Made by a program: the position numbers and the translations under genes. The notes below the pieces were generated by a model, which saw only the letters and a list, made by a program, of their open reading frames with translations, was not told the origin of the DNA and did no database searches. From the IMG/VR virus record IMGVR_UViG_3300031963_000006, positions 1 through 64,000 of that record: a stretch of DNA of 64,000 nt; one strand, written 5' to 3'. The number at the start of each line of letters is the position of its first letter. Within the stretch, counting starts at the first letter, position 1. Shown here one piece after another: positions 20,408-59,056 of this stretch.

Positions 20408-20408
20408 T

Positions 20409-23765: not shown

Positions 23766-24358
23766 ATCCCTGTACTCCCAAAACCGTTATTACCTCTATC
23801 CTTGTTTATTTCTTCTTTGGTTTCTTGTAAATTGACCCATTTTCCGTTAACGACTGGACACAAAACTGCTTGACCTATTTTTGTATCTTTATTTATTGTG
23901 TACGCATAACTATTTGTATTGAAAATAATAACTTGTATCTCACCGGTATATCCATTATCAACAGTTCCAGGGGAATTCATAACAAATAAACCTTGGTTTA
24001 TCGCCAAACCACTTTTAGACCTAACTTGTATTTCATACCCATCTTTAATATCGAATGATAAACCCGTTCTAACTAAACCCCTACCCAAAGGTTGAATAGT
24101 TGTGTCCTCCGTTGCGTATAAATCAAATCCAGAATCGGATGGATAGTTGTAAAAAGGGTCCTTTGCCTCAGGGCGTAACTTCTTATAATTTAAAGTTATC
24201 TTTGGGGTATAATTCAAGATATCATTTTCAAGTTCCTTAACATCAACCCCCGTAACTTTTAAAATCTCATCATAATCAAAATCATAACTGTTATCGGAAA
24301 GTAATTCTTTAATTTTTTCCGATTCTTCTTTTGACATTCCAAAAAAGTCTAAACTCAT
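23762..24358 (-). CDS. dut: trimeric dUTPase with acidic N-terminal extension
   Basis: SGFDL, RSKSGLA, GTVDNGYTGEI, KIGQAV and RGNNGFGSTG (motifs 1-5). Confidence 0.95.
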   Translation of the reverse strand: MSLDFFGMSKEESEKIKELLSDNSYDFDYDEILKVTGVDVKELENDILNYTPKITLNYKKLRPEAKDPFYNYPSDSGFDLYATEDTTIQPLGRGLVRTGLSFDIKDGYEIQVRSKSGLAINQGLFVMNSPGTVDNGYTGEIQVIIFNTNSYAYTINKDTKIGQAVLCPVVNGKWVNLQETKEEINKDRGNNGFGSTGI

Positions 24359-32533: not shown

Positions 32534-35080
32534 ATGTCACTAACAGGAAAAACCATAGGTCAATTAACCTTATTAGGAACTCCAACTGCGGATACTTTAA
32601 TTCCGGTTGAATATAATGATGCAACGTATCATATTGAGTTCTCATCAATAACTTCTAATTCAACAGTTGAGGTAACTTACTCTGAACTTGTTGATAAAAT
32701 TACTGGTGAGACATTAAACACGGGAAGTTATTATATTATAACCGACTTTAGAACTTGTTATGACCAGCCAGATTATAATAATGTAAAAGACCCAATTACT
32801 ACGGGAATATATAAAAGTGCCGATACCGTATCGCCTATTGTTGTGTTTGCAACATCTGCAAATACAATATCTATAGATGCGTTCCAACCTGAGTTTCCTT
32901 TTGATAAAATAAAATACGATTATAGTTTTAACGCAACTGAGCATACTGCAGGACCTGCATTTGGTAGAATTACAGAAAGAATTGATAATTTTAATAATAG
33001 AACGGACTATGACCACAGAACTATATTATTTAAGAGATATCGTGGATATTCATATAATGAAAACAGTCCACTGGCAGGACTTGTCGGTATAAGTGGTATA
33101 ACAGGAACCACAGGAATATTATATGGTAATACAGGTACAACATTTAACTCAAACTTATTTGTAGGAGATTATATTGCGGTAAGAAATTTAAATCCTTATC
33201 TTTTCGAGATTATTTCAGTTGAGGGTGATTCTCTTGCCACAATATCAGGCGTTACTATAAGTGAAACAACCGATTCTCCTTACTATACCGCATTCGATGA
33301 TGGTATAATGAGTTATTATCAACCAAATGTAAGAGCAAATGAAGTTTTTGAATATACAACATTTGGAGATGCATTGGTGGATAGTTCTGTAGTAAATAAC
33401 TATATCGGTGACCAAGCCAATCTATATTTAGAAGATGGTACTGGGGAGTTTTTATTAGCAAATAATGTGTTTATAAGTGGTTCATTCCTTAATAACAGAA
33501 TTGGAAATGGTTCTTATAATAACACATTTAATGATGACTGTGACAGTAATCAAATTGGAGACAGATTTTATAATAACTCAACAAATGATGATTTTGATGG
33601 TAATATAATCGGAGATTTTTTCAGTAACAATTATATCACGGCTAATTTTAACAATAATAGAATTGGTAGTGATTTTGATTTTAATATTTTAATCGGAGGG
33701 TCTTTTTACCGAAACAATATTGGAAATGACTTTGCTAGTAATGTTTGGACTAATGGTGATTTCCAAAATAATGAGATAGGAAACCAATTTAATGATAATA
33801 ATATCTATGATGATTTTTATAATAATGATATTGGTAATGGATATAATAATAATGAAAGTTATTCAGAATTTTATCGTAATTTAATTGGGAACGGATATAA
33901 TAGTAACACCGTATATTCAGATTTCTATGAAAATAATATTGGACACGTTTTTGTAGATAATACCATTGGAACCAATTTAACTATTGGGACATACGATTTT
34001 TACAGAAACATAATTGGTAGTGGATTTAACAATAACGAAATTACAAATGATTTCTATGAAAATGAAATTGGTTATGGTTTTAATGATAACACAATTAGGT
34101 CATCATTTAGTTACAATGACATTTTAAATAATTTTTATGAGAACACTATATATTCGGTTTTTGAAAAAAATAAAATAATGAATGATTTCAATACTTGTAC
34201 TATAGGTAACTCTGAGGATATCGGGGATAATGACTTCATAAGTAACGATATAATGAATAATTTTAAAGGTAACGATATTCTAAATGATTTTGAGAATAAC
34301 ACAATTAAGACCGATTTTAAGGGAAACGAGATTTTTGCGGATTTTAGCAATAATAACGTTGGATTTGCATGTGCGGTTAACGTTTTTAGTGGAGATGTGA
34401 CAAATAATATTTTTGGTGATTTTTTCACTCTGAATACTTGTGAAGGACAGTTTAGATACAACACTATTGGAATTGGTTTTTTTAGTAATGACATAGGTGA
34501 TAGTTTTGGAGTAGGAGGAGGAAACTATAGAGGTAATAGAATTGGAAATAATTTTAGTAATAATACTATTGGTGAATATTTTTACAGTAACATAATTGAA
34601 GAAAATTTTGAGAATAATACGGTAGGTTACTATTTTCAGTCCAATGATATAAAAGTTAATTATTTAAATAATATTGATTTTACAACACTTCAAGGAAACG
34701 TATTGACAATTTCTAACACAACTCCAAGCGGGGCAACAGATTCAACTTTTTCTGTAACGCAAACGACTACAACAGGTCACGGAATAGGTGCGGAATTCGA
34801 GGTAATTGTTTCGGGTAATATTGTAACTACTGTAACAATATTGTCTGCAGGAACTGAATATTTAATTGGTGACCAAATTACTGTAAGTGCGGTTCAGTTC
34901 GACGGAGCAGAGGATTTAGTAATAACAGTCGATTCTGTTTCAGATGAACCGCTTGTGTATACAACAGCAAATTGTACAATTCAAACTTCAAGAGACGGAT
35001 TTAATTTAATTACAACTTTAGACTGGAATACAGTTTCTTGGTATATTTCAGATGCAATAAACGGACCATATAATCCATAA
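32534..35080 (+). CDS. Asn-rich right-handed beta-helix protein (tailspike/fibre-like)
   Basis: Many imperfect F..N.IG..F..N repeats at about 33450-34680; N-terminal anchor-like KTIGQLTLL motif; C-terminal G.GAEFEV...TILSAGTEY..GD module. Confidence 0.75.
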   Translation: MSLTGKTIGQLTLLGTPTADTLIPVEYNDATYHIEFSSITSNSTVEVTYSELVDKITGETLNTGSYYIITDFRTCYDQPDYNNVKDPITTGIYKSADTVSPIVVFATSANTISIDAFQPEFPFDKIKYDYSFNATEHTAGPAFGRITERIDNFNNRTDYDHRTILFKRYRGYSYNENSPLAGLVGISGITGTTGILYGNTGTTFNSNLFVGDYIAVRNLNPYLFEIISVEGDSLATISGVTISETTDSPYYTAFDDGIMSYYQPNVRANEVFEYTTFGDALVDSSVVNNYIGDQANLYLEDGTGEFLLANNVFISGSFLNNRIGNGSYNNTFNDDCDSNQIGDRFYNNSTNDDFDGNIIGDFFSNNYITANFNNNRIGSDFDFNILIGGSFYRNNIGNDFASNVWTNGDFQNNEIGNQFNDNNIYDDFYNNDIGNGYNNNESYSEFYRNLIGNGYNSNTVYSDFYENNIGHVFVDNTIGTNLTIGTYDFYRNIIGSGFNNNEITNDFYENEIGYGFNDNTIRSSFSYNDILNNFYENTIYSVFEKNKIMNDFNTCTIGNSEDIGDNDFISNDIMNNFKGNDILNDFENNTIKTDFKGNEIFADFSNNNVGFACAVNVFSGDVTNNIFGDFFTLNTCEGQFRYNTIGIGFFSNDIGDSFGVGGGNYRGNRIGNNFSNNTIGEYFYSNIIEENFENNTVGYYFQSNDIKVNYLNNIDFTTLQGNVLTISNTTPSGATDSTFSVTQTTTTGHGIGAEFEVIVSGNIVTTVTILSAGTEYLIGDQITVSAVQFDGAEDLVITVDSVSDEPLVYTTANCTIQTSRDGFNLITTLDWNTVSWYISDAINGPYNP

Positions 35081-36078: not shown

Positions 36079-39000
36079 ATGGCCGTTAAAGTTAAAATAG
36101 GTAGTAATAATTATAGTGGTCAAACCGCAAATATAGTATTTTATCCTGAAACGGGTGGTACTATAAATGTAGGTCAACAAATTATACCATATGATTATGT
36201 AACAGATTATTATTTTGGTACATATGAACTTATCTTTAATGCCGACCAATATACATGTAACTTTACAATATCATCCTCTAATCCATTTCCTGTTTACATA
36301 GAACCAACACCTGGTCCTAAAACGTACATATTGGATGGTACCTACAAACAGGACCCTGAAAATTTACCAACCAATGATTTAACTGGCACGTCATTTAATG
36401 GATTAGAAACAAATATACTTTTAGAAAAATATTTTGCAGGAACTTTTGATGGGGGAATATCTCAATTCAGAATGTACGTTGAGCCGTTATCGGCCCCAGA
36501 AGTGAAACATAATTTCAAGTTACTGAAGGACAGGTTTAACATGTTTAATCCTGATTGTCCTGATTGTTTGTTACCTGAATGTGAAATTACAGGGATTACT
36601 TATCAGTTGGCAACACCTGAACCTACAAGTACAAGGACTCCGACTCCAACAAATACCAAAACTCCAAGACCAACTCAAAATCCGACAAGTACACCAACCA
36701 ATACAAATAATCCAACTCAAACACCGGCCAGCACGTCATGTCCGATTGATACACCTAATGTAACCCCAACAAATACAAAAACACCAACCGTAACCAAAAC
36801 TAACATACCAACAAAAACACCTACAGTTACTCAGACAAAAACACCTGACATTACTCAAACACCAACTAAAACATCAACTCCGACTAAAACACAAACAAGA
36901 ACTAATACCTCTACCCCAACACCAACAAATATTGGTACAACAATTTATTCATCACAAACAAATTGTGATTTAACAAACAATATTACAATTGACGGCCCTT
37001 CGATTTATTATTATGAAATAGACTTAGGAAGTGATGTTGGTTTTGTTAATCTAACGTTTAATGCAACTAATATCCCTGATAGATTTAGAGTCGAATGGGA
37101 TGGTAATGTGGTTATAGATACAGGATTTAGAGGAAATCCATTATATAACACTCAATTAAATAATTTGGGTTATCCTAGTGTGTCAGGGGTTGGTAGCGGT
37201 TTTATAACATTTAATAAAACAGCACCTTCACCAACTACTGTGGTATTAATAGTCGAGTCACCGATTCAAGGGGCAATATATAGTTTTAATTTATCATGTC
37301 CTACACCTTATGTTACAACAACTCCAACAAATACTCCGACAAAAACTGAAACTCCGACTAATACTCCGACAAAAACTGAAACAAAAACTCCTACAGTTAC
37401 TAAAACTGAAACACCAACCCCTACCATTACTAAAACAGAAACCCCAACTGTTACTAAAACACCAACTGTTACTAAAACAGAAACAAGAACTCAAACCCCA
37501 ACGAAAACAGAAACACCAACGGTTACTAAGACACCAACCGTTACTAAGACGGAAACCAAAACACAAACTCCTACAAAGACACAGACGCCAACTTACACCT
37601 CAACCCCAACATCAACATATTATTCTCCAGTGAACTTATTCTTCAGCGGTTGTTGTAATCCATATTATATTTATAGAATTTTCAATGTGCCACTTGTTGT
37701 TTCTGAAACGATAGTTGACGGACAAACATATCTAATTCAAGGTGTCGGATTCTCAGGTTGTGGAACGTATTTCGAATCATTATCATCGGCCGACTTCTCA
37801 TATTCTTATATTAGTTTCTCATCAGAAACTGATTGTGAAACTTGTACAATTGGAAGTCCATGTCCTACTCCAACTCCTACCGTCACCTCAAGTAAAACTC
37901 CAACTAAAACCCCAACCACGACAAAAACACCAACACAAACTCCAACTCCAACAAAAACGGAAACTCCGACTCCGACACAAACAAAAACACCTACTAAGAC
38001 AAATACCAAAACTCCAACAGAAACACCAACTAATACTCCAACAAATACAAATACACCGACTGAAACAGTCACACCTACAGTCACTAAAACTCCAACTAAA
38101 ACAAGTACATCTACACCTACGGTCACTAAAACACAAACTCCAACAAAAACTGGAACACCAACAAATACAAAAACTCCAACTTCAACCAAAACTAATACCC
38201 CTACTAACACACCAACAAAAACTAGTACTAAAACACCAACTTCAACTCAAACTAACACCCCAACAGTTACTCAGACACCAACCACAACACCTACAAACAG
38301 TATCACACCTTCAGTAACTAAAACTAACACACCAACAAGAAGTGTTACCCCAACAGTTACTAAAACAAATACTCCTACACAGACTTATCCTAGTGGACCT
38401 GTGGTTAGTGAATGTTCTGTATTATATAATGACAGTACCCTTGTTTATTCGTACACACCACAAACTAATACAAGTGTGTTACTTCCCGTTACGGGGGCTC
38501 AAAGTGGTAATGATATTGCCCACACTACTTCAAAATTATGGATTAATCCTTCAACAAGTCAAACCATAGATGAATGGAATATATCTTTAAATCCGTTTAT
38601 TGCGGTTTATAATCAATCGATTGTATTACCTCACCCTATTGGTAATGGTTTGGCAGCGATTGATAACACAAGATTAATTTCAAGCAACATATCGGTAAAT
38701 CCTAATACAATTGTTGAATTATTAATTGTTGGAGGAAACTTTGTGTCAACACCTAAAATTACACTTCCTGATGGTAGAATCGTCTCAGGTGATTTATTAT
38801 TAACTACAAATAATAAGTTACTTGTAACAACAACTAATGGTGTAAATACCTTCTTGACTCAATATAATTATGACAACGGACAACCTGAAGTTGAAATTAC
38901 TCTAATAATTCCATTACCATGGGGTATGTTTAGTGATAATGGTAATTTATACATAATGAATGGTCAAACTCCTGGTGGAGTTTATAGGATTAACTTAGAT

Positions 39001-39372
39001 TTCCCATATAATCAAACATTTATTATTAATGCCGGAAGACGGATATCTGGAGCGTCCCAACTACCACAATGTGTTGATGTTAACATCAATCCATCCGGTC
39101 AAACATCTACACAAACCCCAACACCAACTGTTACCCCAACTATAACACCAACGTTGACTGTATACCCCCAACCTTTTGCAATATTCATAGAATGTTGTGA
39201 ACCATTTAGAAAGATAAGGGTATTCAATGTTCCCGCATTAGTATTAGCCGGACTAATATCTGACAATGTATACTATGTTGAAGCTATTGGTTTCTCAGGA
39301 TGTGCGACATATTCGCCATTCTTGACAACTTATGACTTCACTTATGAATATTTAAATATAACAACTCCATAA
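36079..39372 (+). CDS. modular Thr/Pro-repeat virion protein (LamG C-terminal strands, beta-sandwich, propeller-like domain, two CC...C modules)
   Basis: AGTFDGGISQFRMYVEPL; DTGFRG module; long TPTKT tracts; CCNPY and CCEPF modules. Confidence 0.8.
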   Translation: MAVKVKIGSNNYSGQTANIVFYPETGGTINVGQQIIPYDYVTDYYFGTYELIFNADQYTCNFTISSSNPFPVYIEPTPGPKTYILDGTYKQDPENLPTNDLTGTSFNGLETNILLEKYFAGTFDGGISQFRMYVEPLSAPEVKHNFKLLKDRFNMFNPDCPDCLLPECEITGITYQLATPEPTSTRTPTPTNTKTPRPTQNPTSTPTNTNNPTQTPASTSCPIDTPNVTPTNTKTPTVTKTNIPTKTPTVTQTKTPDITQTPTKTSTPTKTQTRTNTSTPTPTNIGTTIYSSQTNCDLTNNITIDGPSIYYYEIDLGSDVGFVNLTFNATNIPDRFRVEWDGNVVIDTGFRGNPLYNTQLNNLGYPSVSGVGSGFITFNKTAPSPTTVVLIVESPIQGAIYSFNLSCPTPYVTTTPTNTPTKTETPTNTPTKTETKTPTVTKTETPTPTITKTETPTVTKTPTVTKTETRTQTPTKTETPTVTKTPTVTKTETKTQTPTKTQTPTYTSTPTSTYYSPVNLFFSGCCNPYYIYRIFNVPLVVSETIVDGQTYLIQGVGFSGCGTYFESLSSADFSYSYISFSSETDCETCTIGSPCPTPTPTVTSSKTPTKTPTTTKTPTQTPTPTKTETPTPTQTKTPTKTNTKTPTETPTNTPTNTNTPTETVTPTVTKTPTKTSTSTPTVTKTQTPTKTGTPTNTKTPTSTKTNTPTNTPTKTSTKTPTSTQTNTPTVTQTPTTTPTNSITPSVTKTNTPTRSVTPTVTKTNTPTQTYPSGPVVSECSVLYNDSTLVYSYTPQTNTSVLLPVTGAQSGNDIAHTTSKLWINPSTSQTIDEWNISLNPFIAVYNQSIVLPHPIGNGLAAIDNTRLISSNISVNPNTIVELLIVGGNFVSTPKITLPDGRIVSGDLLLTTNNKLLVTTTNGVNTFLTQYNYDNGQPEVEITLIIPLPWGMFSDNGNLYIMNGQTPGGVYRINLDFPYNQTFIINAGRRISGASQLPQCVDVNINPSGQTSTQTPTPTVTPTITPTLTVYPQPFAIFIECCEPFRKIRVFNVPALVLAGLISDNVYYVEAIGFSGCATYSPFLTTYDFTYEYLNITTP

Positions 39373-39377
39373 TATTA

Positions 39378-41156
39378 ATGTTTAAAAGTGTAAATATATT
39401 AAAATCAGTTAGCCCCGAAGGAGTTTTTCAATTAAATAAAACTTCATTTGATGACATTTTAAAAAATTCACATTCTAAAATTACATTACAGTTACCGATT
39501 GGAAATGAACTTCATAACTTAGAATTAAACAAATCAGAATTATTTGGGTCTAATTTTTATAGAACTTATAGCTCATCTCAAATCTCACAAAGAAATTTGG
39601 GGTCTCACTATAAAGGTAAATTAAGTGGATTTGAAAATTCATCGGTTGCTGTTTCATTCACTGAATTGGGGGTTGTAGGTTTAATTTTGGATGGTGAAAA
39701 TCAATATGAAATTTCCCCATTTGGTACTGATTCATATAAAGTTTTACCAGTCGAGGGTGTACATGAATTTGAATGTGGGGCCGGTCTTTCCCCGGACTAC
39801 GACGAGGAAAAAAAGAACTCGTTAGAAAACAATCTCAGGTTAAGTTCCAATGGGGATATTTTAATGAAATCCCCAACCGCAACAACAAGATGTCTTAATG
39901 TTTATTGGGAGGCGGATACGGACATATATGACACGCTAGGAGTAAACTCAGAATCATATTTAGCATCACTATTTAACGCGGTACAATTATTATTTTCTAA
40001 TGATGGTATACAAATTTATTTATCTGATTTATTCGTAAATTCAGGAACTTCATTTTACTATCCAACCATTCCATATAATCAAATTGGTACTTTGGATATG
40101 TTATATGAATTTGAGGTGGTTAGACCGACATTTAATGGGGATGCCGCGCAACTTTTTTCATTTAACAAAGGGTATGGTGGAGGAGTTGCTTGGGTTGATG
40201 CGTTATGCGCAAGGCCATACGCTTTTTGTTGGATAACATCGTCATTCCAACAACCAATGACATATAGTTGGACCGTGGCGGCTACAACACATGAACATGG
40301 ACACACGTTCGGTTCACCACACACATTTTCTTGTAGCTGGAATACGAATAATTTTCAACCTGGAGACAATCCCCGAGGTTGCTCAAGAATTGATAGTTGT
40401 AGAATTGAATGTACCGCAATTTTGAGCTCTGGTTGCACTGTGGCTCAACAAAATCCAGGATATGGAACTTGTAGTATAACATCTTCATCAAATTGTGGAG
40501 CATGTTGCGCTCCCAATTATTGTTGTGGAGTCCCTGGAAGTCCGGCTCAAGGTGGAACAATTATGAGTTATTGTCACCAAGTTTCGGTAGGTACTAATCT
40601 GAACTTAGGTTTCGGACCACAACCTAGACAAAGAATGCTCGATGCAATCAATAGCCTACCTTCAACTTGTATAGAATGTTTGGGCCCACCACCTGAAGAA
40701 ACTCTAACACCAACACCAACTCTCACTAAAACACCCACCCCGACACCATCAATAGGTACCAGTCCTAATCCTACCCCAACTCAAACTATAACACCTACTA
40801 AAACAATAACTAACACACCAACTTTAACTAAAACTCCAACACAAACTAAAACACCAACAATAACTAAAACTTTAACACCTAGTATAACCCCAACAATAAC
40901 CAGCACACAAGTCAATAATAATTGTCAGTATTGTTTGAGTTTACATCCATGTACAGTTAATAGGTTTTTTTGGCAATGTTGTGAGCCGTATGATAGTTTT
41001 AGAGTTTATCTAATACCTTTTGATGTTTCAGAGACTCTAGTAAATGGAAATACATATTATGTAGAAGCCGTTGGTTTTTCAGGATGTGCCGTGTATGATG
41101 TAACATTAACAAATGCGGATTTTTCATATGAATATATAAACATTATAACTCCTTAA
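39378..41156 (+). CDS. reprolysin-like (M12B) zinc metalloprotease with prodomain, Thr/Pro stalk and C-terminal CC module
   Basis: HEHGHTFGSPH at 40290-40322, Met-turn GTIMSYC, GGVAWVDALC, and prodomain HYKGKLSG...VAVS and FECG. Confidence 0.88.
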   Translation: MFKSVNILKSVSPEGVFQLNKTSFDDILKNSHSKITLQLPIGNELHNLELNKSELFGSNFYRTYSSSQISQRNLGSHYKGKLSGFENSSVAVSFTELGVVGLILDGENQYEISPFGTDSYKVLPVEGVHEFECGAGLSPDYDEEKKNSLENNLRLSSNGDILMKSPTATTRCLNVYWEADTDIYDTLGVNSESYLASLFNAVQLLFSNDGIQIYLSDLFVNSGTSFYYPTIPYNQIGTLDMLYEFEVVRPTFNGDAAQLFSFNKGYGGGVAWVDALCARPYAFCWITSSFQQPMTYSWTVAATTHEHGHTFGSPHTFSCSWNTNNFQPGDNPRGCSRIDSCRIECTAILSSGCTVAQQNPGYGTCSITSSSNCGACCAPNYCCGVPGSPAQGGTIMSYCHQVSVGTNLNLGFGPQPRQRMLDAINSLPSTCIECLGPPPEETLTPTPTLTKTPTPTPSIGTSPNPTPTQTITPTKTITNTPTLTKTPTQTKTPTITKTLTPSITPTITSTQVNNNCQYCLSLHPCTVNRFFWQCCEPYDSFRVYLIPFDVSETLVNGNTYYVEAVGFSGCAVYDVTLTNADFSYEYINIITP

Positions 41157-41172
41157 AAAGTATATATAAAAT

Positions 41173-43191
41173 ATGAAACATTTAAGTCTACATAAAAGTT
41201 TTACAAATGATGGTGTTTTTGAATTAAATTTAAATACAATAACCTCACTTAAAACTCAAACTAATGAAAGAATTTATCTGTCTTTACCTATAGATGGGAT
41301 TGAAAAACAAGTTGAAATATATAGAACAAATATTGGGTCCGATGATTTTAAAGTTGTAAATGAATTAGGTCAAATTTTATCGTATGATTCAGGAATTCAC
41401 TACGGTGGTCGGGTCATTGGCTCTGAAAAATCATTTGTTGCATTATCTTTTAGTGATGACGGAATTATCGGAATAGTTCAAGATAATACTAAAGAGTATG
41501 GGTTTACCAAAATAGATGAAAATTTTCATAGACTTCATGAAACGATTAATGATAACGAAGGGTTTGAATGTGGATGTGAATTACTATCACATAATAATAA
41601 TTTACAGGAATTAAAATTATCCCCAAAAACTTTAACGTTACCATATGCTTCTAAATGTATTAATATACGATGGGAAGCGGATTATGATGTGATACAACAA
41701 TTTGGTGGAACGGGTCCGGCCATAACATGGTTGACCGCACTTTTTAATGCACAAAAACAACTTTATGCTAATGATAATATTCAGGTTAATTTAGCCTTAT
41801 TATTCTTATGGGAAAATGGTCCTTCAGGTTTTGTTGTGGGAACAACAGATGTTATACTAGATGCCTATGTAAATTATAGAAATGCAAATGGTGGCATTGC
41901 CGAGAATTGTGGTATGCTACTGAGTTTTGGAACTTCTCCAACAAGCAATTCAGGTGCGGGTATCGCATATGTGGGGGCTCTTTGTGGTCCCAACAAATAT
42001 GGTTATACACAATTAAAAAGAGGAGATTCTACAGGAACTCCTAGTTCTACTGTATATAGTAGAAGTGTTAAAGTAGTTACTCACGAGCAAGGTCACTTAT
42101 TAGGTTCAAGACATACTTTTAGATGTAATTGGAATACCGCTTGGGTATATGGAGATACTACTTTTGGTGCTGAGGCCATTGACGGGACTTCCACGGTAGA
42201 GGTACCTCCAGGAGTTCCTGCGTGTGCTCAACTACCAATACCACCCGGATTTCAAGGAACTATAATGAGTTATGGAGACAGTGCAGGAACCGCTCCGATA
42301 AATTTCGCATTAGGGTTTGGTCCAATACCTAGACAAAGAATGTATGACTTCATTAATAACAATTTTGCGTGTTTAACATGTCAGGCGGTTCCATTTGAAA
42401 CCCCAACACCAACTCCAACAACAATTACTCAAACTCCAACACCAACTCCAACCAAAACACCAACACAAACCCCCACAAAAACTCCAACTAAAACAAATAC
42501 ACCAACTGTAACTCCAACCAAAACATCTACTCCAACACCAACTAAAACTATAAACGCAACACCTGACCCCACTCAAACTCCAACTATAACTAAAACAGTA
42601 ACAAATACAAATACTCAAACCACCACCGTAACACCCACCAATTGTTGTAGTAGATTTACATTAACTTCAGGAGTAAACGACACTGGAGGTAGTACATTTA
42701 ATGTAATTTCATGTAATGGAATCCCGCAAACAACGACTGTACCTCAAGGAACTTCAATAGATATTAATTGCGCATCCACAGTAACATTAACTTCAGGAAC
42801 AGGAACATTTGTAAGATATCCTGGTTGTGTTTGCACAAGTCCAACCCCAACTAAAACTAACACCCCTACAGTAACCCCAACTACCACGATAAATCAAAGT
42901 CCTCAACCGACCCCTACACCAACAGCAACACCAACGGCTACACCTCTTAGGGGAGATTGTGCTTATTGTATAAGTATTTATCCTTGTTCCGTTAGTAAAT
43001 ATTTTACCAGTTGTTGTGAACCATTTGAAAACATTAGAATATTTTTAATACCAGCAAATGTCGCCGACACATTAATAGATGGTGAATCATACTATGTTGA
43101 GGCTGAAGGTTTTTCTAATTGTGCTATTTATAATGAAAGTATAACAACCGCTCAGAATTCGTATAAATATATAAGTATAACCCCTAATTGA
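41173..43191 (+). CDS. reprolysin-like (M12B) zinc metalloprotease paralog 2
   Basis: [11 protein letters not shown] at 42082-42114, [16 protein letters not shown], prodomain HYGGRVIG and FECG; Thr/Pro stalk; CCEPF C-terminus. Confidence 0.88.
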
Positions 43192-43202: not shown

Positions 43203-46200
43203 ATGAAACAATTGAATTTACTCAGAAATATTAATTTAGATAATTCATTTGAAATTGATGTGTCGGAATTAAGGACTGTATCATCACAGAAATTTGATAC
43301 AATGACTATGTCAATTCCGTTAGGGGGTATTAATAAAAACGTTATTCTAAAAAAAGTTAATATATTTTCTGAGAATTTTACGGTCACTACATCTGATGGA
43401 GAAAATATCGAATGGGATTTGGGTGAACATTATAGAGGAGAAATCGAAGGAGAAGAAAATTCTTTTTGTTCTTTAAGTTTCACAAATAATGAAATATATG
43501 GACATATCGTAACGACTGGCTCAACATATGATATAAATTTTGTCTCAGGCTCAACATACAGAACATCAAGTGTAAATGAAGAAAATCCTATAAATTTTAC
43601 ATGTCATCATGAACCTAAAGAAGGTCAAACATATTCAAATCCATATAACCCTTCTTTAAATACAAAAAAAAACACCGGTCTTAAAACATTAAATCCTTAT
43701 GTTGCAGACCAGGCAACTAAATTGGTAAAAATAGATTGGGTAGTTGATTATGACATACGACTTTTGAAAGGTGCAAATACAGTTTCGTATATAACTTCAA
43801 TTTTTAATGCAACAAAAACTTTATATGAAAACGACGGGATTTTTGTCGTACTTAATTTTTTACACATTTTTACCACATCATATTCACCGTATAGAACAAC
43901 ACCTCTCACGGTACCTATCAATGACGGGTGCGGGTATGGTTCCTGTTCTATGGTTTTATTGTTGTTTAATTTCAGATATAGTTTAGGTAACGGAATTTAT
44001 CCCGCAGGAACTAGCGCGGCTAATTTTTCCGGTGATTTAAAACATTTGTTAACCGCTACTTTTCCAACAACCTCTTTCTCAAATCCTGCTAATAAAATAC
44101 AAGGACTGGCCGATGGTATACAGGTTTTGTGTAACCCAATATCTTCTGATTATACCGTAGTAATTGATGGTCAAGAATATTTGGCGACAAGTACTAATTC
44201 ACCAGTATGTTTCAGTCAAATTGATGTAAATGCAACCGCTAACTCAACAACATATTCATCTACAGTACAAGTAATTACACACGAACAAGGTCATTTAATG
44301 GGTTCAAATCATACCCACGGATGTTACTGGAACACAACCAATTTTGTACCCGGAGGTAACCCAATTGGTTGTAACAGAATTGATAGTTGTGTTACTTTTG
44401 AAACTTATACTTTTTTAGGTTGTCCATCATCAGTTCAAACTGTTTTTGAAATTGTAAATGGTGTGTGTCCTTTTCCGGGCACCCCACCCAACAGTGGTGG
44501 TACCATAATGAGTTATTGTGGTTTAGTCGGAGGAGGAAGTCAACTTTTTACAAACGGATTCGGCCCCCAACCACAACAAAGAATTGTAAATTTCATTAAT
44601 TCATTATCTTGTTTACAGTCGCTAGACACCACACCAACCCCAACTCCTACTTTAACCTTAACCCCGACCAAAACCCCGACATCTACTCCGACTAAGACAA
44701 TCAATGCCACCCCAAACCCAACTCAAACTTCTACAATAACAAAAACATCAACTGTAACTCCCACTAAATCTGTAGGAGTTAGCCCAAACCCAACCACCAC
44801 ACCGACAATAACTCCAACAAATACCGTTACAAGAACTAAAACTAAAACACCAATTTCAACAAATACCACAACACCAACAATAACTCCCACTAATGGTGAT
44901 GATTGTAAAAACTGTACAGACCAACACCCATGTATAACACAAACTCCGACAGTAACTCCAACTCAGCCATGTGATACCGTGATATCACAACCATCAACAA
45001 GTCCATTATTTAATATTGGTTTATCTAAATATAATAACTCAGGGTATACTAACATTGGAACCAGATTTTACTCATACGGATTTCAATTAGGAGGAAGTGG
45101 TTCGACATATTATTTTTCAAACACAAATGATGTATGGAAAAGTACCGACAGTACAAATGGTCCCTTAAACAGAAGTGGTATTTGGTCATTATCTACATTT
45201 CCGTCTAATACTTGGTTGGGATTTTCTTTTTGTATTGATGTTGTTGATTTTGCTAATTTTTATTACGTTGGTTTTGGTGCGGATAATGCCTTTAGATTGA
45301 CTATAGATGGTATCGAAACTATTAACACACTGTTGGGTGGTTATAACAATAGTACTTTGACATTTAGTAATTGGCATGTATATCAGATTCCACTATACCC
45401 TGGTCATCACGTATTGAACGTTTATGGTCTAAATCTATCACAAACAACATCAGGTGTTTTTGGATGTGAAATTTATCAAAATACACTTGATGAATTAACA
45501 GGAGCAACCTCACCCAATAACTTAAACATTATTTTTTCGACTAGCTCTTATTCCGAATCAAATGCCGAAATAATACAATCATCAACTGGTTTACAATTGA
45601 ATAGTGGATATACTTGTCCTTCTGGTTTTGTTTATGAATCGTGTACGGGTGATTGTGTAAGATTCATATCATGTCCACAACCAACTTTGACTCCAACCAC
45701 AACAAACACACCAACTAAAACTAACACAATAAATTTTGTAGGTGTTACACCCACTAAGACACCTACCCCAACTAAATGTTGTTCAACATATATACTTTCA
45801 TCAAGTCCTTCAGATGTTACAGGTTCAACATTTACAATAGTACGATGCGTTGGTAATTTGTTTTTAACTCTACCAGTACCTGTTGGACAATCTCAAACTA
45901 TAACATGTTCATATAATGCAACTTTAATAAATGGATTAGGTTCGATAACACAATTACCTGGTTGTGATTGTAACACGGTTACCCCAACACCAACCCCAAC
46001 CACTATAGAAGATTTGGGCCCCTGCTTCAATCGTTGGATACCAACCTATACGTTCCCTTTTAACCAAAATCAACAAACTGTATTTACCGGTTTTACACAA
46101 GGAATTTTTGTTGAGATGGTACTTTCTGGTTCGGTTGAAATTGCAACCTACAACGGTAATCCTCCAAGTTGTGACGTTATTAGAAGTTTTAATCCTTATA

Positions 46201-49200
46201 CTTTAACCGCATTAAAGCAAGTTTATGCGGGTGGAATTGGGCAAAGTATTTTTAAACAACCAACAGCCCAAAGTGCTTTTGTTATAACATTTAATTTTGG
46301 TCAACCAATTAACGAAGTTACATTAGTTATAGGAGGTTCTGGAACATACGATTTCGGAGGTGGCAACGAAGTTTTTATAATAACAACAAATACTGAAATT
46401 CCAACAATTACATCAAGTATAAATTGTTATACCACAATTAATAACAACCAAATTCTTTCAGGTGCAAATATAGTACCACCACCTGTAGGTTCAGGTACCG
46501 GAGGTGGGTTATTCACTATAAATTGTATTACGGATTATACAACTTTAGTAATATCTGGTGCCGGTGGGTATGATGGGTCTGAAATTTCTATTTGTGAAAT
46601 TTATGTACCAGGTACAACTAGAACCCCAACCCCAACCATCACACGTACAAAAACACCAACTATAACTCCAACCACATCTTTTGGTTTTGTCCCAACTTCT
46701 ACACCCACTATAACACAAACAAAAACCAACACAAATACTTCGACACAAACAAAAACCAACACCCCGACAAAAACACAGACTAAAACACCCGGTTTACCAC
46801 AAAGTCCGACTCCAACACCAACTAATTGTTGTTCTAATTTTCAAATATCACTATTACAAGGATTTAATAGTGCGATTTACAATGTCAGCTCATGTCAAGG
46901 ACAATCAGGAACTTTTACATACACAGGTTTATCCTTTATAACAATAGAATGTGCAACAAACGTTACAAATGTAAGCGGAGCGTCTATTGTTAGGTTACCA
47001 GGATGTGGATGCCCAACACCAACCCCTACTCCAACACTAACTCCAACACCTGTTACACAATGTTCTAATTTAGTTTGGCCTGACCCAACAATAGTTGTGA
47101 ATGGAATAACAATAACTGTTAATAGAACAGGAAATACTTATTTATTAATACAACCACCATCAAATGACAGACCAATTTGTGGTACTGGAATATCAATACA
47201 ATATCCATCGTTATCTTTGGGTAGTGGGTTAAATGGGATAGGTGTTACAGGTCCTCCATCCTTTTTCTCAAATTGGACAGTTAGTTTAACTTTTAGTCAA
47301 CCAATTACAAGTATAACAATCGCATTAAGAGGTGCCGGATGTACATGTCAGTATTCACCAAATGACCCTGAAAATTTCCTATTTACCACAAATACAGGTA
47401 TACCAACAATCAACCCTATCTTAATTTGTAATGGGGTTGTTACAGGTAATGAAATTATATTACACAGTACGGCGCCAATTTGGGAAGGTGGGGTTACTGG
47501 TGACGGAATTTTTGAAATTAAGAACTGTTTAGGGTTTACAAATTTAACAATTACAGGGGACGGAGGTTATTTAGGAACTGCAATAGGAATTTGTGACACA
47601 TCAATTAACCCAAATCAATGTATTACTCCAACACCAACTCAAACAAAAACACCAACTCAAACAAAAACACCTACTGTTACACCAACTTCAGGAGGGGAAA
47701 TTAATCCTTGTCCGTCAATTTTATTACTCCAAAGACAAGAATCTTTTGGTGAATTTTATGTATCATTTTATGACTTTGATTTGAACACCACATATACTTT
47801 GGATGTGCCAAACATAGATGATTTTGTACAAGATATTGCATATACTTTCGATAAACTTTGGACAGTAAAGCCGGCAATTGCCCCTTTTGACCCAAATCCT
47901 GTTGTTGGTTTCAGAGAATGGAATATAACATGGAACCCTTTTGTTGCTACCTATAATAGAGATATACTATATCCTGGTCCGTATATTCCTGGTGATAATG
48001 TAATTTTTGGATTGGGTTTATTTGCAATTAATAATACTACTTTGATAAGCTCATCGGGTTATGATAGTTTTCCAGAGAGAATTATTGAAGTTGATATATC
48101 AACAAATCAAACGGTAATTACCCAAAAAATGGCTCTCCCATCTATGACACAAGCGAGTGGAGACATTTATCTAAGGTCGGATAATTTATTATTTGTTGGT
48201 ACCAAAAATTTCAGTACCGGAGTTTTAGGAGTCAATGTGTATAATTACCTATCAACGTCGAATACTCCCGTATATTCAATTTCGATTCCAATAGGTACTC
48301 CAGGTACGCCTTTCGGAAGCTCGATAGCGGCAATATTTGAATGGGATAATGAGATGTACGTTATGAGAACTCAATCCAATCCAGATAAAACGGAAACTTA
48401 TAGGTTAAATTTAACCCCTCCTGGTAGTGCCGAATATGTAGGTGTATTTAGTAATCTATTCAACGTATTCGGAGGTTCAAGTATAGTTAATTGCCCTACC
48501 CCAACCCCAACTCCTACACTAACATCAACCCCAACAAAAACTACTACCCCAACTCCAACACCAACTAGAACCTTACTAAGTAGTTTATGTTCCGGTCGAT
48601 TTATTGCTCCAACAACATATAACGGTGTTAATGTTACATTCGCATCAACTGGGGACATACAGACTATTTTATCTCCATCGGCGTTATTACCATCTTGTGG
48701 CCAAATGAATTGGAATGGTATACCGGCCTATCTTTGCGGGGCCTCAAGTAATTCTACTTCGACTCCTACAAGTAGTTTTTCACTAACATTTAATTTTAGT
48801 TTATCTGTTAATAACGTATCAATAGTTCTAAACGGTGCTGGATGGGGAGGAAATGAAAATTTTGTATTCACTACTGACACAGGTATCCCAACAATTTCAA
48901 GTACATTTAATTGTTATTCAACAATAATTGGAAACCAAATTATTTCAGGGGCTGGAGCTCCATCAACTCCACCTAATGGGCCTACAGGAGGCGCCGGTGT
49001 TTTCATAATAAATAATACAAACCCATATACATCACTCACAATAACAGGTGCGGGAGGTTATGACGGAACCTATTTAAATATTTGTGATTTTAATGTAGAA
49101 CAAATCACTCAAACCCCAACCCCAACTAAAACTCAAACACCAACTGTGAGTCAAACAGTAACACCTACTAAAACACAAACTCAAACTAACACTACGACTG

Positions 49201-50120
49201 TTACACCAACTAAGACAAACACTATGACACCTACGAGTTCAATTGGTGCAACACCACCTAGTACACAAACCCCTACATCAACATCAACACCAACAGTTAC
49301 CCAAACACAAACAAACACCAAAACAAATACCGTAACACAAACCAAGACTCCAACACAAACCATCGGGATTACCCCTTCAAATACTCAAACTACGACTCCT
49401 ACAGTAACTAATACAAATACAAATACTAAAACTCAAACTCCTACTAAAACTAAAACACCTACTCAAACCTCAACACCAACAACAACTTTACCAAAAACTC
49501 CTGACCAAACATTAACACCAACAACCACTCCAACTGTAACTAAAACCAAAACTCAAACACCATCTAATACAACAACTCAAACTCAGACTCCATCATCATC
49601 TGGACCTTGCCGAGCCCCTCAAGTTTTGTCAACAATCAGAACTGCCACTAGAATTTATAATGGATGCACTTGTATTGACCCAATTACAAGAGGGTGTAAT
49701 GAAACCTTCGGGAATTGTAGCAACTGTCCGGTCGGAAGTACTCAAGGGTGTTCACCTAATTGTGCTTGTTTTTCAAATTTAATAAACATCGGAACAGTTG
49801 GGAATGATTATAACGATAACGCAGGTTGTTCGTGGTATTCGGATTTTATGAATTTTACTAATAGGGCGGTACTACCTGTTGAAATTAAAGTAGAGGGTAA
49901 TATTACTAACTGGACTCAATTACAAGTCGGGATGAGAGTCTATCCAGGTAATCAATCACCTAACAACCCATGTGGTCAGGCGGCAGTTCGTAATTATTGG
50001 GTTAGTTCAAATTCGTTATTAAATTATTATAGCGATTTAGAAGGTCCTCCGGTAATTGTTCGAGTTCAAACAATCAATGGAATTAATCAAATAACATCAA
50101 TTTGGCAATGCACGGGTTAA
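43203..50120 (+). CDS. giant (2305 aa) M12B metalloprotease with PA14-like, repeated beta-sandwich, propeller-like and Cys-rich modules on Thr/Pro linkers
   Basis: HEQGHLMGSNH at 44280-44312, GTIMSYC, prodomain HYRGEIEG and FTCH; multiple TPT tracts. Confidence 0.85.
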   Translation: MKQLNLLRNINLDNSFEIDVSELRTVSSQKFDTMTMSIPLGGINKNVILKKVNIFSENFTVTTSDGENIEWDLGEHYRGEIEGEENSFCSLSFTNNEIYGHIVTTGSTYDINFVSGSTYRTSSVNEENPINFTCHHEPKEGQTYSNPYNPSLNTKKNTGLKTLNPYVADQATKLVKIDWVVDYDIRLLKGANTVSYITSIFNATKTLYENDGIFVVLNFLHIFTTSYSPYRTTPLTVPINDGCGYGSCSMVLLLFNFRYSLGNGIYPAGTSAANFSGDLKHLLTATFPTTSFSNPANKIQGLADGIQVLCNPISSDYTVVIDGQEYLATSTNSPVCFSQIDVNATANSTTYSSTVQVITHEQGHLMGSNHTHGCYWNTTNFVPGGNPIGCNRIDSCVTFETYTFLGCPSSVQTVFEIVNGVCPFPGTPPNSGGTIMSYCGLVGGGSQLFTNGFGPQPQQRIVNFINSLSCLQSLDTTPTPTPTLTLTPTKTPTSTPTKTINATPNPTQTSTITKTSTVTPTKSVGVSPNPTTTPTITPTNTVTRTKTKTPISTNTTTPTITPTNGDDCKNCTDQHPCITQTPTVTPTQPCDTVISQPSTSPLFNIGLSKYNNSGYTNIGTRFYSYGFQLGGSGSTYYFSNTNDVWKSTDSTNGPLNRSGIWSLSTFPSNTWLGFSFCIDVVDFANFYYVGFGADNAFRLTIDGIETINTLLGGYNNSTLTFSNWHVYQIPLYPGHHVLNVYGLNLSQTTSGVFGCEIYQNTLDELTGATSPNNLNIIFSTSSYSESNAEIIQSSTGLQLNSGYTCPSGFVYESCTGDCVRFISCPQPTLTPTTTNTPTKTNTINFVGVTPTKTPTPTKCCSTYILSSSPSDVTGSTFTIVRCVGNLFLTLPVPVGQSQTITCSYNATLINGLGSITQLPGCDCNTVTPTPTPTTIEDLGPCFNRWIPTYTFPFNQNQQTVFTGFTQGIFVEMVLSGSVEIATYNGNPPSCDVIRSFNPYTLTALKQVYAGGIGQSIFKQPTAQSAFVITFNFGQPINEVTLVIGGSGTYDFGGGNEVFIITTNTEIPTITSSINCYTTINNNQILSGANIVPPPVGSGTGGGLFTINCITDYTTLVISGAGGYDGSEISICEIYVPGTTRTPTPTITRTKTPTITPTTSFGFVPTSTPTITQTKTNTNTSTQTKTNTPTKTQTKTPGLPQSPTPTPTNCCSNFQISLLQGFNSAIYNVSSCQGQSGTFTYTGLSFITIECATNVTNVSGASIVRLPGCGCPTPTPTPTLTPTPVTQCSNLVWPDPTIVVNGITITVNRTGNTYLLIQPPSNDRPICGTGISIQYPSLSLGSGLNGIGVTGPPSFFSNWTVSLTFSQPITSITIALRGAGCTCQYSPNDPENFLFTTNTGIPTINPILICNGVVTGNEIILHSTAPIWEGGVTGDGIFEIKNCLGFTNLTITGDGGYLGTAIGICDTSINPNQCITPTPTQTKTPTQTKTPTVTPTSGGEINPCPSILLLQRQESFGEFYVSFYDFDLNTTYTLDVPNIDDFVQDIAYTFDKLWTVKPAIAPFDPNPVVGFREWNITWNPFVATYNRDILYPGPYIPGDNVIFGLGLFAINNTTLISSSGYDSFPERIIEVDISTNQTVITQKMALPSMTQASGDIYLRSDNLLFVGTKNFSTGVLGVNVYNYLSTSNTPVYSISIPIGTPGTPFGSSIAAIFEWDNEMYVMRTQSNPDKTETYRLNLTPPGSAEYVGVFSNLFNVFGGSSIVNCPTPTPTPTLTSTPTKTTTPTPTPTRTLLSSLCSGRFIAPTTYNGVNVTFASTGDIQTILSPSALLPSCGQMNWNGIPAYLCGASSNSTSTPTSSFSLTFNFSLSVNNVSIVLNGAGWGGNENFVFTTDTGIPTISSTFNCYSTIIGNQIISGAGAPSTPPNGPTGGAGVFIINNTNPYTSLTITGAGGYDGTYLNICDFNVEQITQTPTPTKTQTPTVSQTVTPTKTQTQTNTTTVTPTKTNTMTPTSSIGATPPSTQTPTSTSTPTVTQTQTNTKTNTVTQTKTPTQTIGITPSNTQTTTPTVTNTNTNTKTQTPTKTKTPTQTSTPTTTLPKTPDQTLTPTTTPTVTKTKTQTPSNTTTQTQTPSSSGPCRAPQVLSTIRTATRIYNGCTCIDPITRGCNETFGNCSNCPVGSTQGCSPNCACFSNLINIGTVGNDYNDNAGCSWYSDFMNFTNRAVLPVEIKVEGNITNWTQLQVGMRVYPGNQSPNNPCGQAAVRNYWVSSNSLLNYYSDLEGPPVIVRVQTINGINQITSIWQCTG

Positions 50121-58721: not shown

Positions 58722-59054
58722 TTAATCTATATTTTTCACATTGACATTTATAAATCTTTGTTCTTTCATTAACACCTCAACATCTTTTAATCTTATTTTT
58801 ACTTGTTTGTTTTTCCCTTTTGACATTTTTTTCTCAATAACAATTTCATCCACCTCAAGTCTCAAAAATAGATTAATTAAAACTTCTTTTTCTTCTTTAT
58901 CTAATTCTTTAAGTTTGGCCCTAAATCTCCTTATGGATTGCATACCACCGGCTCCTTGAACCAATTTTTCAATAACGCAACCTTCTTTCCAAGTGAAAGG
59001 TGTTTCATTCCAAGGAAATGGTGTATCATCCCATGCGTAACAAACGAGTGCCAT
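58722..59054 (-). CDS. hypothetical protein (N-terminal W..T...W repeats)
   Basis: ATG at 59054 (MALVCYAWDDTPFPWNETPFTW) preferred because track start 59159 overlaps the divergent gene. Confidence 0.65.
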   Translation of the reverse strand: MALVCYAWDDTPFPWNETPFTWKEGCVIEKLVQGAGGMQSIRRFRAKLKELDKEEKEVLINLFLRLEVDEIVIEKKMSKGKNKQVKIRLKDVEVLMKEQRFINVNVKNID

Positions 59055-59056
59055 AC

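What the first reader, a model, noticed from the sequence alone, without database searches (positions are those of the whole stretch)
37651..43191. Shared ~60-aa CC...GFS.C module ends three adjacent proteins: a dockerin-like anchor?
Seen: CC(E/N)P(F/Y)..(I/F/Y)R(V/I)(F/Y).(V/I)P......L/I..G/D..Y.(V/I)...GFS.C..Y......Y.Y(I/L) at about 37651-37830 (internal), 39193-39372, 40977-41156 and 43012-43191. In three genes it is the extreme C-terminus. In the two smaller proteases it is preceded by CxxCxxxxPC, and a similar motif occurs near 44905. Inference: a common docking module attaches different catalytic or binding heads, via Thr/Pro linkers, to one virion site, like cellulosome architecture.
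Basis: partly seen in the sequence, partly recalled or inferred. Interest (0 to 1): 0.65.

Follow-up and report, generated by a model that had tools for sequence, protein, structure and literature searches.

The report
Shuffled cysteine-stapled module in jumbo-phage proteins
The repeated ~65-residue "CC...GFSGC" segment is a real, unnamed small beta-barrel domain shuffled among giant Thr/Pro-linked proteins of a freshwater jumbo phage, and it looks more like an accessory binding module than a dockerin-type virion anchor.

Summary
Four copies lie in the window and two more elsewhere in the 321-kb genome. They form one domain family (HMM E-values 1e-32 to 1e-36).

The genome is a complete T4-like jumbo myovirus from lakes. 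Its host is very probably a Bacteroidota, because the phage encodes two genuine T9SS cargo proteins.

No Pfam, NCBIfam or PDB family matches the module. A profile search of 1.84 billion proteins found about 29 true members. All are unnamed Thr/Pro-linked mosaic proteins on phage-like contigs.

AlphaFold models (pLDDT 83-84) give a five-stranded barrel. It resembles OB folds only weakly (Z at most 5.1).

The anchor reading is not supported:
- In the wider family the module is mostly internal and forms tandem arrays of up to four.
- A Cx2Cx5C "clasp" lies either behind or in front of it.
- The window's C-terminal copies belong to two separate clades.
- Most of this phage's Thr/Pro-linked proteins lack the module, including the third protease paralogue.
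- The genome has no cohesin or dockerin, and the fold is all-beta.

My best reading, at moderate-to-low confidence, is an accessory targeting or adhesion module comparable to a CBM or an ADAM ancillary domain. It is a new domain family in a known kind of modular architecture.

The parts
36079..39372 (+). 1097-aa mosaic protein. Order: N-terminal ~62-aa module 'A', Thr/Pro linkers, a 'DRF..WDG' domain, module copy 1 with clasp, a 179-aa linker, a beta-propeller-like domain, then module copy 2 at the C-terminus. No signal peptide.
37618..37824 (+). Module copy 1 (internal), residues 514-582 of the 1097-aa protein.
   Evidence: modelled (pLDDT 84)
37834..37863 (+). C-x2-C-x5-C clasp directly behind copy 1, followed by Thr/Pro linker. 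Modelled as a short helix.
39163..39369 (+). Module copy 2. It is the extreme C-terminus of the 1097-aa protein, has no clasp and contains only 3 Cys.
39378..41156 (+). 592-aa Reprolysin-like (M12) zinc metalloprotease (HExxH at HEHGH), then a 73-aa Thr/Pro linker, clasp and module.
40923..40952 (+). C-x2-C-x5-C clasp in front of copy 3.
40953..41153 (+). Module copy 3, extreme C-terminus of the 592-aa protease.
   Evidence: (model pLDDT 83)
41173..43191 (+). 672-aa Reprolysin-like metalloprotease (HEQGH), then linker, a 'CCS.F...PGCxC' module, linker, clasp and module.
42643..42834 (+). A second, unrelated shuffled Cys module ('CCSRF...PGCVC', 64 aa). It recurs at 45777-45971 in the 2305-aa protein and in relatives P0002-4 and P0009-12.
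42958..42987 (+). C-x2-C-x5-C clasp in front of copy 4.
42988..43188 (+). Module copy 4, extreme C-terminus of the 672-aa protease.
43203..50120 (+). 2305-aa third protease paralogue. It has the same propeptide-like region and catalytic head, many other modules, and no copy of the module.
44904..44933 (+). Orphan clasp (C-x2-C-x3-HPC) flanked by Thr/Pro linker on both sides.

Best explanation
The repeat is an autonomous domain of about 65 residues. It is a five-stranded, OB-like beta-barrel with three conserved cysteines: a CC pair after strand 1 and the Cys of GFSGC. It is usually capped by a separate C-x2-C-x5-C clasp that can sit either directly behind the barrel (internal copies) or directly in front of it (protease copies).

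It is one of at least six modules that recombination shuffles among roughly a dozen giant 'beads-on-a-string' proteins of a freshwater T4-like jumbo myovirus with a probable Bacteroidota host. The beads are joined by Thr/Pro linkers, which the phage's own glycosylation genes may decorate.

The most likely role is an accessory targeting or adhesion module. It would hold the attached protease, lyase or adhesin head on a polymeric ligand of the host surface or matrix, either glycan or protein. Tandem copies would add avidity. This is how carbohydrate-binding modules work in modular glycanases, and how the Cys-rich ancillary domains work behind reprolysin/ADAM catalytic domains.

Shown: the family, its limits, its fold class, its positions and copy numbers, the mosaicism and the genome context. 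Inferred: that it binds anything, and what it binds.
For: - Family and significance.
- No known family: Pfam, NCBIfam and PDB profile searches.
- Only about 29 true relatives among 1.84e9 representatives. All are Thr/Pro-linked mosaic proteins named 'hypothetical', 'surface protein' or 'LRR protein' on phage-like contigs.
- Two independent models agree on five strands (pLDDT 83 and 84, pTM 0.70). Their only PDB resemblance is to OB folds, including superantigen and AB5 toxin B-subunit OB domains (Z 3.5-5.1).
- Position and copy number behave like a CBM or adhesin repeat. The module is internal, terminal and in tandem arrays of 2-4.
- Its partners in the same polypeptides are enzymes and adhesin-type domains: Reprolysin proteases, LRR, SprB repeats, a PA14-like domain (my reading of the sequence, not a Pfam match), DUF285, and a beta-helix region in P0019 that I read as pectate-lyase-like.
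- Head and module have discordant histories.
- The carriers have no signal peptide. The same phage's genuine T9SS cargo proteins have both a signal peptide and a canonical CTD, so the module is not an export tag.
- Exact contigs of the two protease genes occur in lake RNA libraries.
Against: - No ligand, binding site or homologue of known function was found.
- The OB-like fold match is weak (Z at most 5.1, within the range the tool calls common).
- The conserved residues (Cys, Pro, aromatics) could all be structural core.
- I could not inspect model coordinates to locate exposed conserved residues.
- Whether the carrier proteins are in the virion is unknown.
- A purely structural bead or a docking role fit the position data almost as well.
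Confidence: 0.42

Rival explanations
1. Inert structural bead. The module is a compact, Cys-stapled folding unit. It only punctuates and stiffens long, probably glycosylated Thr/Pro linkers, or caps the C-terminus against proteolysis by the phage's own proteases. It has no ligand of its own.
For: The conserved positions are those expected of a core and staples (CC, C, P, aromatics). Other small Cys modules are interspersed in the same way. The clasp motif also ends unrelated domains just before linkers, for example C-x2-C-x4-C at residues 160-168 of the 1097-aa protein.
Against: Orthologous modules are kept at 65-91% identity, which is as high as or higher than the catalytic and propeller domains beside them. 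Two old paralogous C-terminal subtypes are each conserved across viruses. Tandem arrays without linkers (P0022) are more typical of avidity repeats.
Confidence: 0.25
2. Virion docking module. The C-terminal copies plug different heads into one site on the capsid or tail.
For: Three adjacent genes end with the module exactly at the stop codon, and so do 13 or more relatives. The carriers lack signal peptides, so they must either join the virion or wait for lysis. The genes lie in a co-directional block with a tail-fibre gene. The T4 Hoc protein binds the capsid through its C-terminal domain (established knowledge).
Against: Most family members carry the module internally or in tandem. The C-terminal copies are two separate clades, 39-52% identical, each tied to its own upstream domain. 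Most Thr/Pro-linked proteins of the genome and the third protease lack it. There is no cohesin or dockerin, and no partner was identified.
Confidence: 0.15
3. Metal-binding or thiol-reactive unit. The CC pair, the GFSGC Cys and the C-x2-C-x5-C clasp coordinate Zn in the reducing cytoplasm, or exchange disulfides. The clasp-less copies (3 Cys, one unpaired) and the orphan clasp at 44904-44933 could then pair in trans and cross-link two proteins.
For: The odd cysteine count in clasp-less copies. An orphan clasp sits between linkers in a neighbouring gene. The clasp works from either side of the barrel with identical spacing, C-x2-C-x5-C-x5-F-x2-CC, both in tandem arrays and in the protease copies. 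The proteins are synthesised without a signal peptide.
Against: This is pure inference from Cys counts. Disulfides versus Zn could not be distinguished, and there is no homology to known zinc ribbons or thioredoxin-like CxxC proteins.
Confidence: 0.08
4. C-terminal export or sorting signal, analogous to the T9SS C-terminal domain of the Bacteroidota host.
For: The module sits at the extreme C-terminus of secreted-type enzymes. The host very probably has a T9SS. There is a faint Pfam hit to a CHU_C-associated Ig domain (E 0.08).
Against: There is no match to Por_Secre_tail or TIGR04183-type models, and no N-terminal signal peptide. The same phage encodes two real T9SS cargos with both a signal peptide and a canonical CTD. 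Internal and tandem copies cannot be sorting tags.
Confidence: 0.03

Closest known systems
Carbohydrate-binding modules of modular glycanases (for example CBM2 behind Pro/Thr boxes in Cellulomonas enzymes; the small disulfide-bonded OB-fold CBM10 of Cellvibrio). Recalled from established knowledge.
   Same: A small, autonomous, non-catalytic beta module joined to enzymes by Pro/Thr-rich linkers. It is found at the N-terminus, C-terminus or internally, in tandem copies, and is shuffled between heads. The barrel is OB-like and Cys-stapled.
   Different: There is no sequence match to any CBM family in Pfam. No CBM structure appears among the top structural matches. The heads here are mostly proteases and adhesin domains, and no ligand is known.
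Dockerin-cohesin system of cellulosomes
   Same: A roughly 60-70-residue module shared by different catalytic heads through Pro/Thr linkers. It is often C-terminal, sometimes internal.
   Different: A dockerin is a duplicated Ca-binding helical motif, whereas this module is an all-beta barrel. Neither PF00404 nor PF00963 is in the genome. Tandem arrays occur and no scaffold partner is present.
Disintegrin-like and cysteine-rich ancillary domains of reprolysin (M12B) proteases (ADAMs, P-III snake venom metalloproteinases)
   Same: A Cys-rich, non-catalytic domain lies C-terminal to a reprolysin-type catalytic domain. In those enzymes it targets the substrate.
   Different: No detectable homology. 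Here the domain is separated from the head by long Thr/Pro linkers and also occurs in proteins without a protease.
T4 Hoc capsid-decoration protein
   Same: The phage is T4-like. Hoc is a string of small beta domains displayed on the virion, and its C-terminal domain binds the capsid.
   Different: No sequence or fold match to Hoc was found. Virion location is untested, and the module is not confined to the C-terminus.
OB-fold proteins (SSB, PriB, MCM N-domain; superantigen and AB5 toxin B-subunit OB domains)
   Same: Five-stranded barrel topology. These are the best structural matches, with Z 3.5-5.1, rmsd 2.4-3.6 A and 54-63 aligned residues.
   Different: Z is below the level the tool regards as meaningful. 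Sequence identity is 3-16%. The short helix follows strand 2 rather than strand 3. The context is extracellular and Cys-rich, so nucleic-acid binding is implausible.

Membership tests
Dockerin (type I, PF00404) | Sequence match to the duplicated about 22-residue Ca-binding (EF-hand-like) segments | tested here: not met
   No Dockerin_1 hit in the carrier proteins or in the isolated modules, even at E up to 10. None in the whole genome.
Dockerin (type I, PF00404) | Helical fold (two Ca-loop-helix motifs) | tested here: not met
   Both AlphaFold models are five-stranded beta-barrels with only a 4-residue helix.
Dockerin (type I, PF00404) | A cognate cohesin-bearing scaffold in the same genome | tested here: not met
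   PF00963 Cohesin is absent from the complete 321-kb genome. The positive controls matched. A non-homologous partner cannot be excluded.
Known carbohydrate-binding module families | Profile match to a curated CBM family | tested here: not met
   No CBM family in the Pfam scans of whole proteins or modules. The PDB profile search returned 0 hits.
Known carbohydrate-binding module families | Demonstrated binding of a glycan | not testable with these tools
   Needs recombinant protein and binding assays.
T9SS C-terminal sorting domain (PF18962 / TIGR04183) | Profile match at the extreme C-terminus | tested here: not met
   No hit in the modules. The only Por_Secre_tail matches in the genome are two other proteins, at 215483-215686 and 274739-274966.
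T9SS C-terminal sorting domain (PF18962 / TIGR04183) | N-terminal Sec signal peptide on the cargo | tested here: not met
   The N-termini of the 1097-, 592- and 672-aa proteins have no hydrophobic leader (read by eye). The phage's real T9SS cargos do have one.
OB fold | Five-stranded closed barrel with significant structural similarity to OB proteins | tested here: inconclusive
   All top VIA-align matches are OB folds, but Z is only 3.3-5.1. Foldseek found nothing in the PDB.
Reprolysin-like M12 metallopeptidase (the heads, not the module) | Pfam match above the gathering score, and an HExxH zinc motif | tested here: met
   PF13688 scores 49.5 and 44.0 bits against a cut-off of 27 for the 592- and 672-aa proteins, and 29.2 bits for the 2305-aa protein. 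HEHGH and HEQGH are present.

The most novel reading that the evidence does not exclude
The barrel and the C-x2-C-x5-C clasp are two halves of a split docking pair. Clasp-less C-terminal barrels, such as the end of the 1097-aa protein, would capture orphan clasps displayed between linkers of other giant proteins, such as 44904-44933 in the 2305-aa protease, or a site on the virion. This would assemble a glycosylated, multi-enzyme 'cellulosome-like' coat on a jumbo phage.
Probability: 0.07. Interest if true: 0.85.

Novelty: new variant of a known kind. Interest (0 to 1): 0.45.

Why it matters
The module defines an unnamed domain family that so far appears only in a clade of lake jumbo phages. 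It also points to a larger picture. These phages devote tens of kilobases to mosaic, Thr/Pro-linked proteins that are probably glycosylated. The proteins combine proteases, adhesin repeats and small Cys modules, an architecture known from cellulolytic bacteria and giant-virus fibrils but hardly studied in phages.

If the module is a binding unit, it is a handle for finding what these phages recognise or digest on Bacteroidota surfaces. If it is a docking unit, it would be a natural display system on a T4-like virion. In either case it is a compact, independently folding, shuffle-tolerant domain that could be tested by simple expression.

Tried and rejected
- **Nucleotide and protein searches of deposited phage genomes.** Searches with the region and with the 592-aa protease found no match.
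- **Pfam and NCBIfam on the isolated modules at E up to 10.** Only noise appeared: Ig_7 at 0.08, IglJ at 0.02.
- **PDB sequence-profile search.** 0 hits.
- **Foldseek against the PDB.** Nothing below E 4.
- **Language-model feature search of the ESM Atlas.** Best score 0.79, below the level the tool treats as evidence.
- **Atlas structure search.** Only unnamed Uroviricota clusters (TM 0.65-0.69), which could not be retrieved.
- **BFVD.** Two probable homologues in uncultured Caudovirales phages, one named only 'SprB repeat' (E 1.2e-3 and 1.2e-2, both prob 1.00). There is no functional annotation.
- **IMG/VR pattern scan.** Only the same virus in other samples, plus one close relative, L006.
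- **Complex prediction.** The clasp-less copy 2 against the orphan clasp segment (44850-44972) gave 'no answer' (score 0.02). This is not evidence either way.
- **Literature searches.** 'jumbo phage' + 'SprB' and 'phage' + 'reprolysin' + 'virion' found nothing relevant.
- **False positives of the big profile search.** P0017 and P0024 (bacterial Ig-like repeat proteins sharing only a 'YYV..G..GC' hairpin) and P0029, P0030 and P0033 (low-complexity repeats) were set aside after reading the sequences.
- **NCLDV capsid search in the genome.** Negative, and its controls were silent, so it is uninformative. The phage nature rests on the tail sheath, baseplate wedge and tail fibre matches.
- **Model coordinates.** They are not available to scripts. 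Disulfide pairing and surface conservation could not be examined.

Full report
**1. What the window is**

The window is bases 133-64132 of a single 321,403-bp virus record with direct terminal repeats, rated 100% complete. Its GC content is 32.7%.

The genome encodes a tail sheath (phrog_23, E 5e-57), a baseplate wedge subunit, a DnaB-like helicase, ribonucleotide reductase and a DNA polymerase. The window itself holds a tail-fibre protein at 59822-62668. The sheath is nearest to an uncultured 484-kb phage, Microcystis phage Mel-JY01 and Flavobacterium phages. Behind these come thousands of T4-like phages. It is therefore a T4-like jumbo myovirus.

The genome also encodes two proteins with an N-terminal signal peptide and a canonical T9SS sorting domain (PF18962, 49 bits each). 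One carries an apparent tandem duplication that I read as fasciclin-like. The other I read as lectin-like. Neither was scanned against Pfam. An 873-aa protein has SprB repeats. T9SS and SprB are Bacteroidota features by established knowledge, so the host is very probably a member of that phylum.

The DNA of the region occurs almost word for word in lake and freshwater metagenomes from 16 studies.

**2. The observation**

- copy 1, 37618-37824, internal;
- copy 2, 39163-39369;
- copy 3, 40953-41153;
- copy 4, 42988-43188.

Copies 2-4 end at the last or last-but-few residue before the stop codons of three adjacent genes.

The copies share 36-49% identity and 15 invariant columns. An HMM built from them scores each at E 1e-32 to 6e-36 against all six frames of the genome. 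The best chance hit is at E 0.5.

The two smaller genes are Reprolysin-like zinc metalloproteases, as is the N-terminus of the following 2305-aa gene. The CxxCxxxxPC motif in front of copies 3 and 4 and the orphan motif at 44904-44933 are also confirmed.

Two more copies lie outside the window:
- residues 248-316 of a 1634-aa LRR protein (genome 142747-147651, minus strand);
- a divergent copy at residues 101-185 of the SprB-repeat protein (genome 137038-139659), found after HMM iteration.

**3. The family**

Neither Pfam nor NCBIfam has a model for the module, and a profile search of PDB sequences found nothing.

The word-based protein search found only four relatives. All are Reprolysin-like proteases ending in the same module. 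Because the family scans left the module open and novelty rests on absence of relatives, I ran the exhaustive profile search. It found 34 proteins among 1.84 billion representatives. Reading them leaves about 29 true members. Five are repeat proteins that match only a hairpin or low-complexity sequence.

All true members are Thr/Pro-linked mosaic proteins. Their sources call them 'hypothetical', 'surface protein' or 'LRR protein'. The contigs that could be inspected look like phage: T4 RNA ligase, thymidylate synthase, a neighbouring SprB-repeat protein. BFVD holds two probable homologues from uncultured Caudovirales phages.

**4. Anatomy**

A 40-sequence alignment (A4) gives the general form. 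A linker ends in (Y/L)-P-P. Then come x4-F-x2-CC, a strand, a conserved Pro, 'YY(V/I)E', 'G(F/Y)(S/T)GC', a 'Y.Y' strand, and in most members '(Q)TDC-x2-C-x5-C' followed by the next linker.

The clasp has the same spacing wherever it occurs. In tandem arrays (P0022) the clasp of one copy is followed by x5-F-x2-CC of the next. That is exactly the arrangement in front of the window's protease copies. So the clasp can serve a barrel from either side, and the protease copies look like the second unit of a former tandem.

Copy 2 and its orthologues have no clasp and only three cysteines.

Two AlphaFold predictions were made. One was of copy 3 with its N-terminal clasp (9-sequence alignment). The other was of copy 1 with its C-terminal clasp (40 sequences). 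Both give the same five strands and a short helix after strand 2, with pLDDT 83 and 84 and pTM 0.70. The clasp is modelled less confidently, as a short helix.

Foldseek finds nothing in the PDB. The exhaustive aligner finds only OB folds, at Z 3.3-5.1. The tool itself warns that this range can reflect a common arrangement. I therefore call the module an OB-like small barrel, without claiming homology.

**5. Position, phylogeny and mosaicism**

In the representatives plus this genome there are roughly 16 C-terminal and 27 internal copies. Arrays contain two to four copies.

In a maximum-likelihood tree of the barrels (64 columns, so weakly resolved), the clasp-preceded C-terminal copies form one clade (support 92/91). 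The clasp-less C-terminal copies, apart from the long-branch P0031, form another (99/98). Both lie among internal copies. Each C-terminal type is tied to a particular upstream context: a protease-headed protein, or the beta-propeller-like domain.

Within the genome, an all-against-all comparison of linker-delimited segments shows at least six other modules shared among about twelve proteins. They include an N-terminal ~62-residue module, the propeller-like domain, a 'DRF..WDG' domain, LRR blocks and the 'CCS.F...PGCxC' module.

Head and module have different histories. Against P0003, the 592-aa protease is 98% identical in the catalytic domain and 66% in the module. Against P0002 the figures are 36% and 80%.

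**6. Interpretation**

The specific dockerin-like anchor is not supported:
- The fold is not a dockerin's, and no dockerin or cohesin exists in the genome.
- Internal and tandem copies dominate the family.
- Most Thr/Pro-linked proteins of this phage, including the third protease paralogue, lack the module.
- The three C-terminal copies are not one interchangeable unit but two old subtypes.

The module is also not a T9SS tag. The carriers have no signal peptide, whereas the phage's real T9SS cargos have both a leader and a canonical CTD.

The behaviour is that of accessory binding modules in modular extracellular enzymes and adhesins. It appears in any position and any copy number, on Pro/Thr linkers, beside proteases, probable lyases, LRR, SprB and PA14-like domains. 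That is my best reading (about 0.4). An inert structural bead (0.25) and a virion-docking role (0.15) are the main rivals.

Because the proteins are made without a leader, the cysteines may bind zinc or become oxidised only after lysis. The odd cysteine count of clasp-less copies and the orphan clasp in the neighbouring gene allow a speculative pairing in trans. The one complex prediction I could run gave no verdict and is not evidence either way.

**7. Expression**

Two lake metatranscriptome libraries contain contigs identical to parts of the two protease genes: 40567-40933 and 42233-42762. This is compatible with transcription. The tool notes that DNA carry-over is not excluded.

**8. Verdict**

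This is a real and statistically secure feature. It is a new domain family within a known kind of architecture.

Noticed in passing
window 12776-23765 (minus strand) and 62945-64000 (plus strand): A protein-glycosylation-like gene set flanks the Thr/Pro-linker genes. It comprises GDP-mannose 4,6-dehydratase (16225-17202), a DegT-type aminotransferase (17199-18353), an epimerase/reductase (18355-19281), a GT11 fucosyltransferase-like gene (19278-20063), a Fringe-like GT (21068-21694), GT2-type enzymes (12776-13579 and 22350-23765), and a PF11397 Skp1-type polypeptide GlcNAc-transferase (62945 onward, E 2e-67). The phage may O-glycosylate its own linkers, making mucin-like fibrils as giant viruses do.
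   Followed up: partly
genome 214559-215701 (L016:577-1719) and 273947-274972 (L017:709-1734): Two phage genes encode proteins with a Sec signal peptide and a canonical T9SS C-terminal sorting domain (PF18962, about 49 bits). One appears to hold two fasciclin-like repeats and the other looks lectin-like; both readings are by eye and were not scanned. These are phage-encoded cargo for the host's type IX secretion system, and a strong pointer to a Bacteroidota host.
   Followed up: partly
window 42643-42834 and 45777-45971; also relatives P0002-4 and P0009-12: A second unnamed shuffled module of about 64 residues. It starts with CC and ends in PGCxC, lies between linkers, and has no family assignment.
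   Followed up: partly
window 36079-36270 and genome 147460-147651 (minus strand); internal in P0009: A ~62-residue module (core 'FYP.TGG.(I/V)N(I/V)G...PY.Y...YGTY') forms the N-terminus of both the 1097-aa and 1634-aa proteins (54% identity). It is internal in a relative. If any shared module anchors these proteins to the virion, this N-terminal one is as good a candidate as the C-terminal one.
   Followed up: no
window 32534-35080: An 848-aa protein is built largely of Asn-rich pseudo-repeats ('N.IG..F..N' every 10-20 residues), which suggests a beta-helix or fibre. It has no Pfam or PHROG match.
   Followed up: no
window 37294-38317, both strands: Long spurious ORFs (82-191 aa) run in other frames and on the opposite strand through the Thr/Pro-linker DNA. 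They are artefacts of the ACN/CCN repeat composition. The same linker DNA attracts many 90-95% matches from other organisms in lake metagenomes.
   Followed up: partly
genome 147685-148953, minus strand (L001:7686-8954): The 422-aa protein next to the 1634-aa module carrier has a GDSGS motif and a weak NAL1_N hit (E 4e-4). It may be a trypsin-like serine protease, and so another protease in these clusters.
   Followed up: no
L006:3-1766 (IMG/VR contig 3300032227_001762): In a close relative, a Reprolysin-like protease ends not in the module but in a domain that looks like a glycoside-hydrolase catalytic core (by eye). This is a further sign that the C-terminal position of these proteases is a swap site.
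   Followed up: no
contigs carrying P0014 and P0025: In two distant relatives a 124-aa DoxX_2/MauE-like membrane protein gene lies one gene downstream of the module-bearing gene. MauE-type proteins are linked to disulfide formation. The two small ORFs I checked in this window (58243-58701 and 58722-59126) gave no counterpart.
   Followed up: partly
window 15509-16228 and 23762-24358: PhoH-like protein (E 4e-63) and dUTPase lie among the sugar-pathway genes. These are ordinary auxiliary genes of T4-like phages.
   Followed up: no
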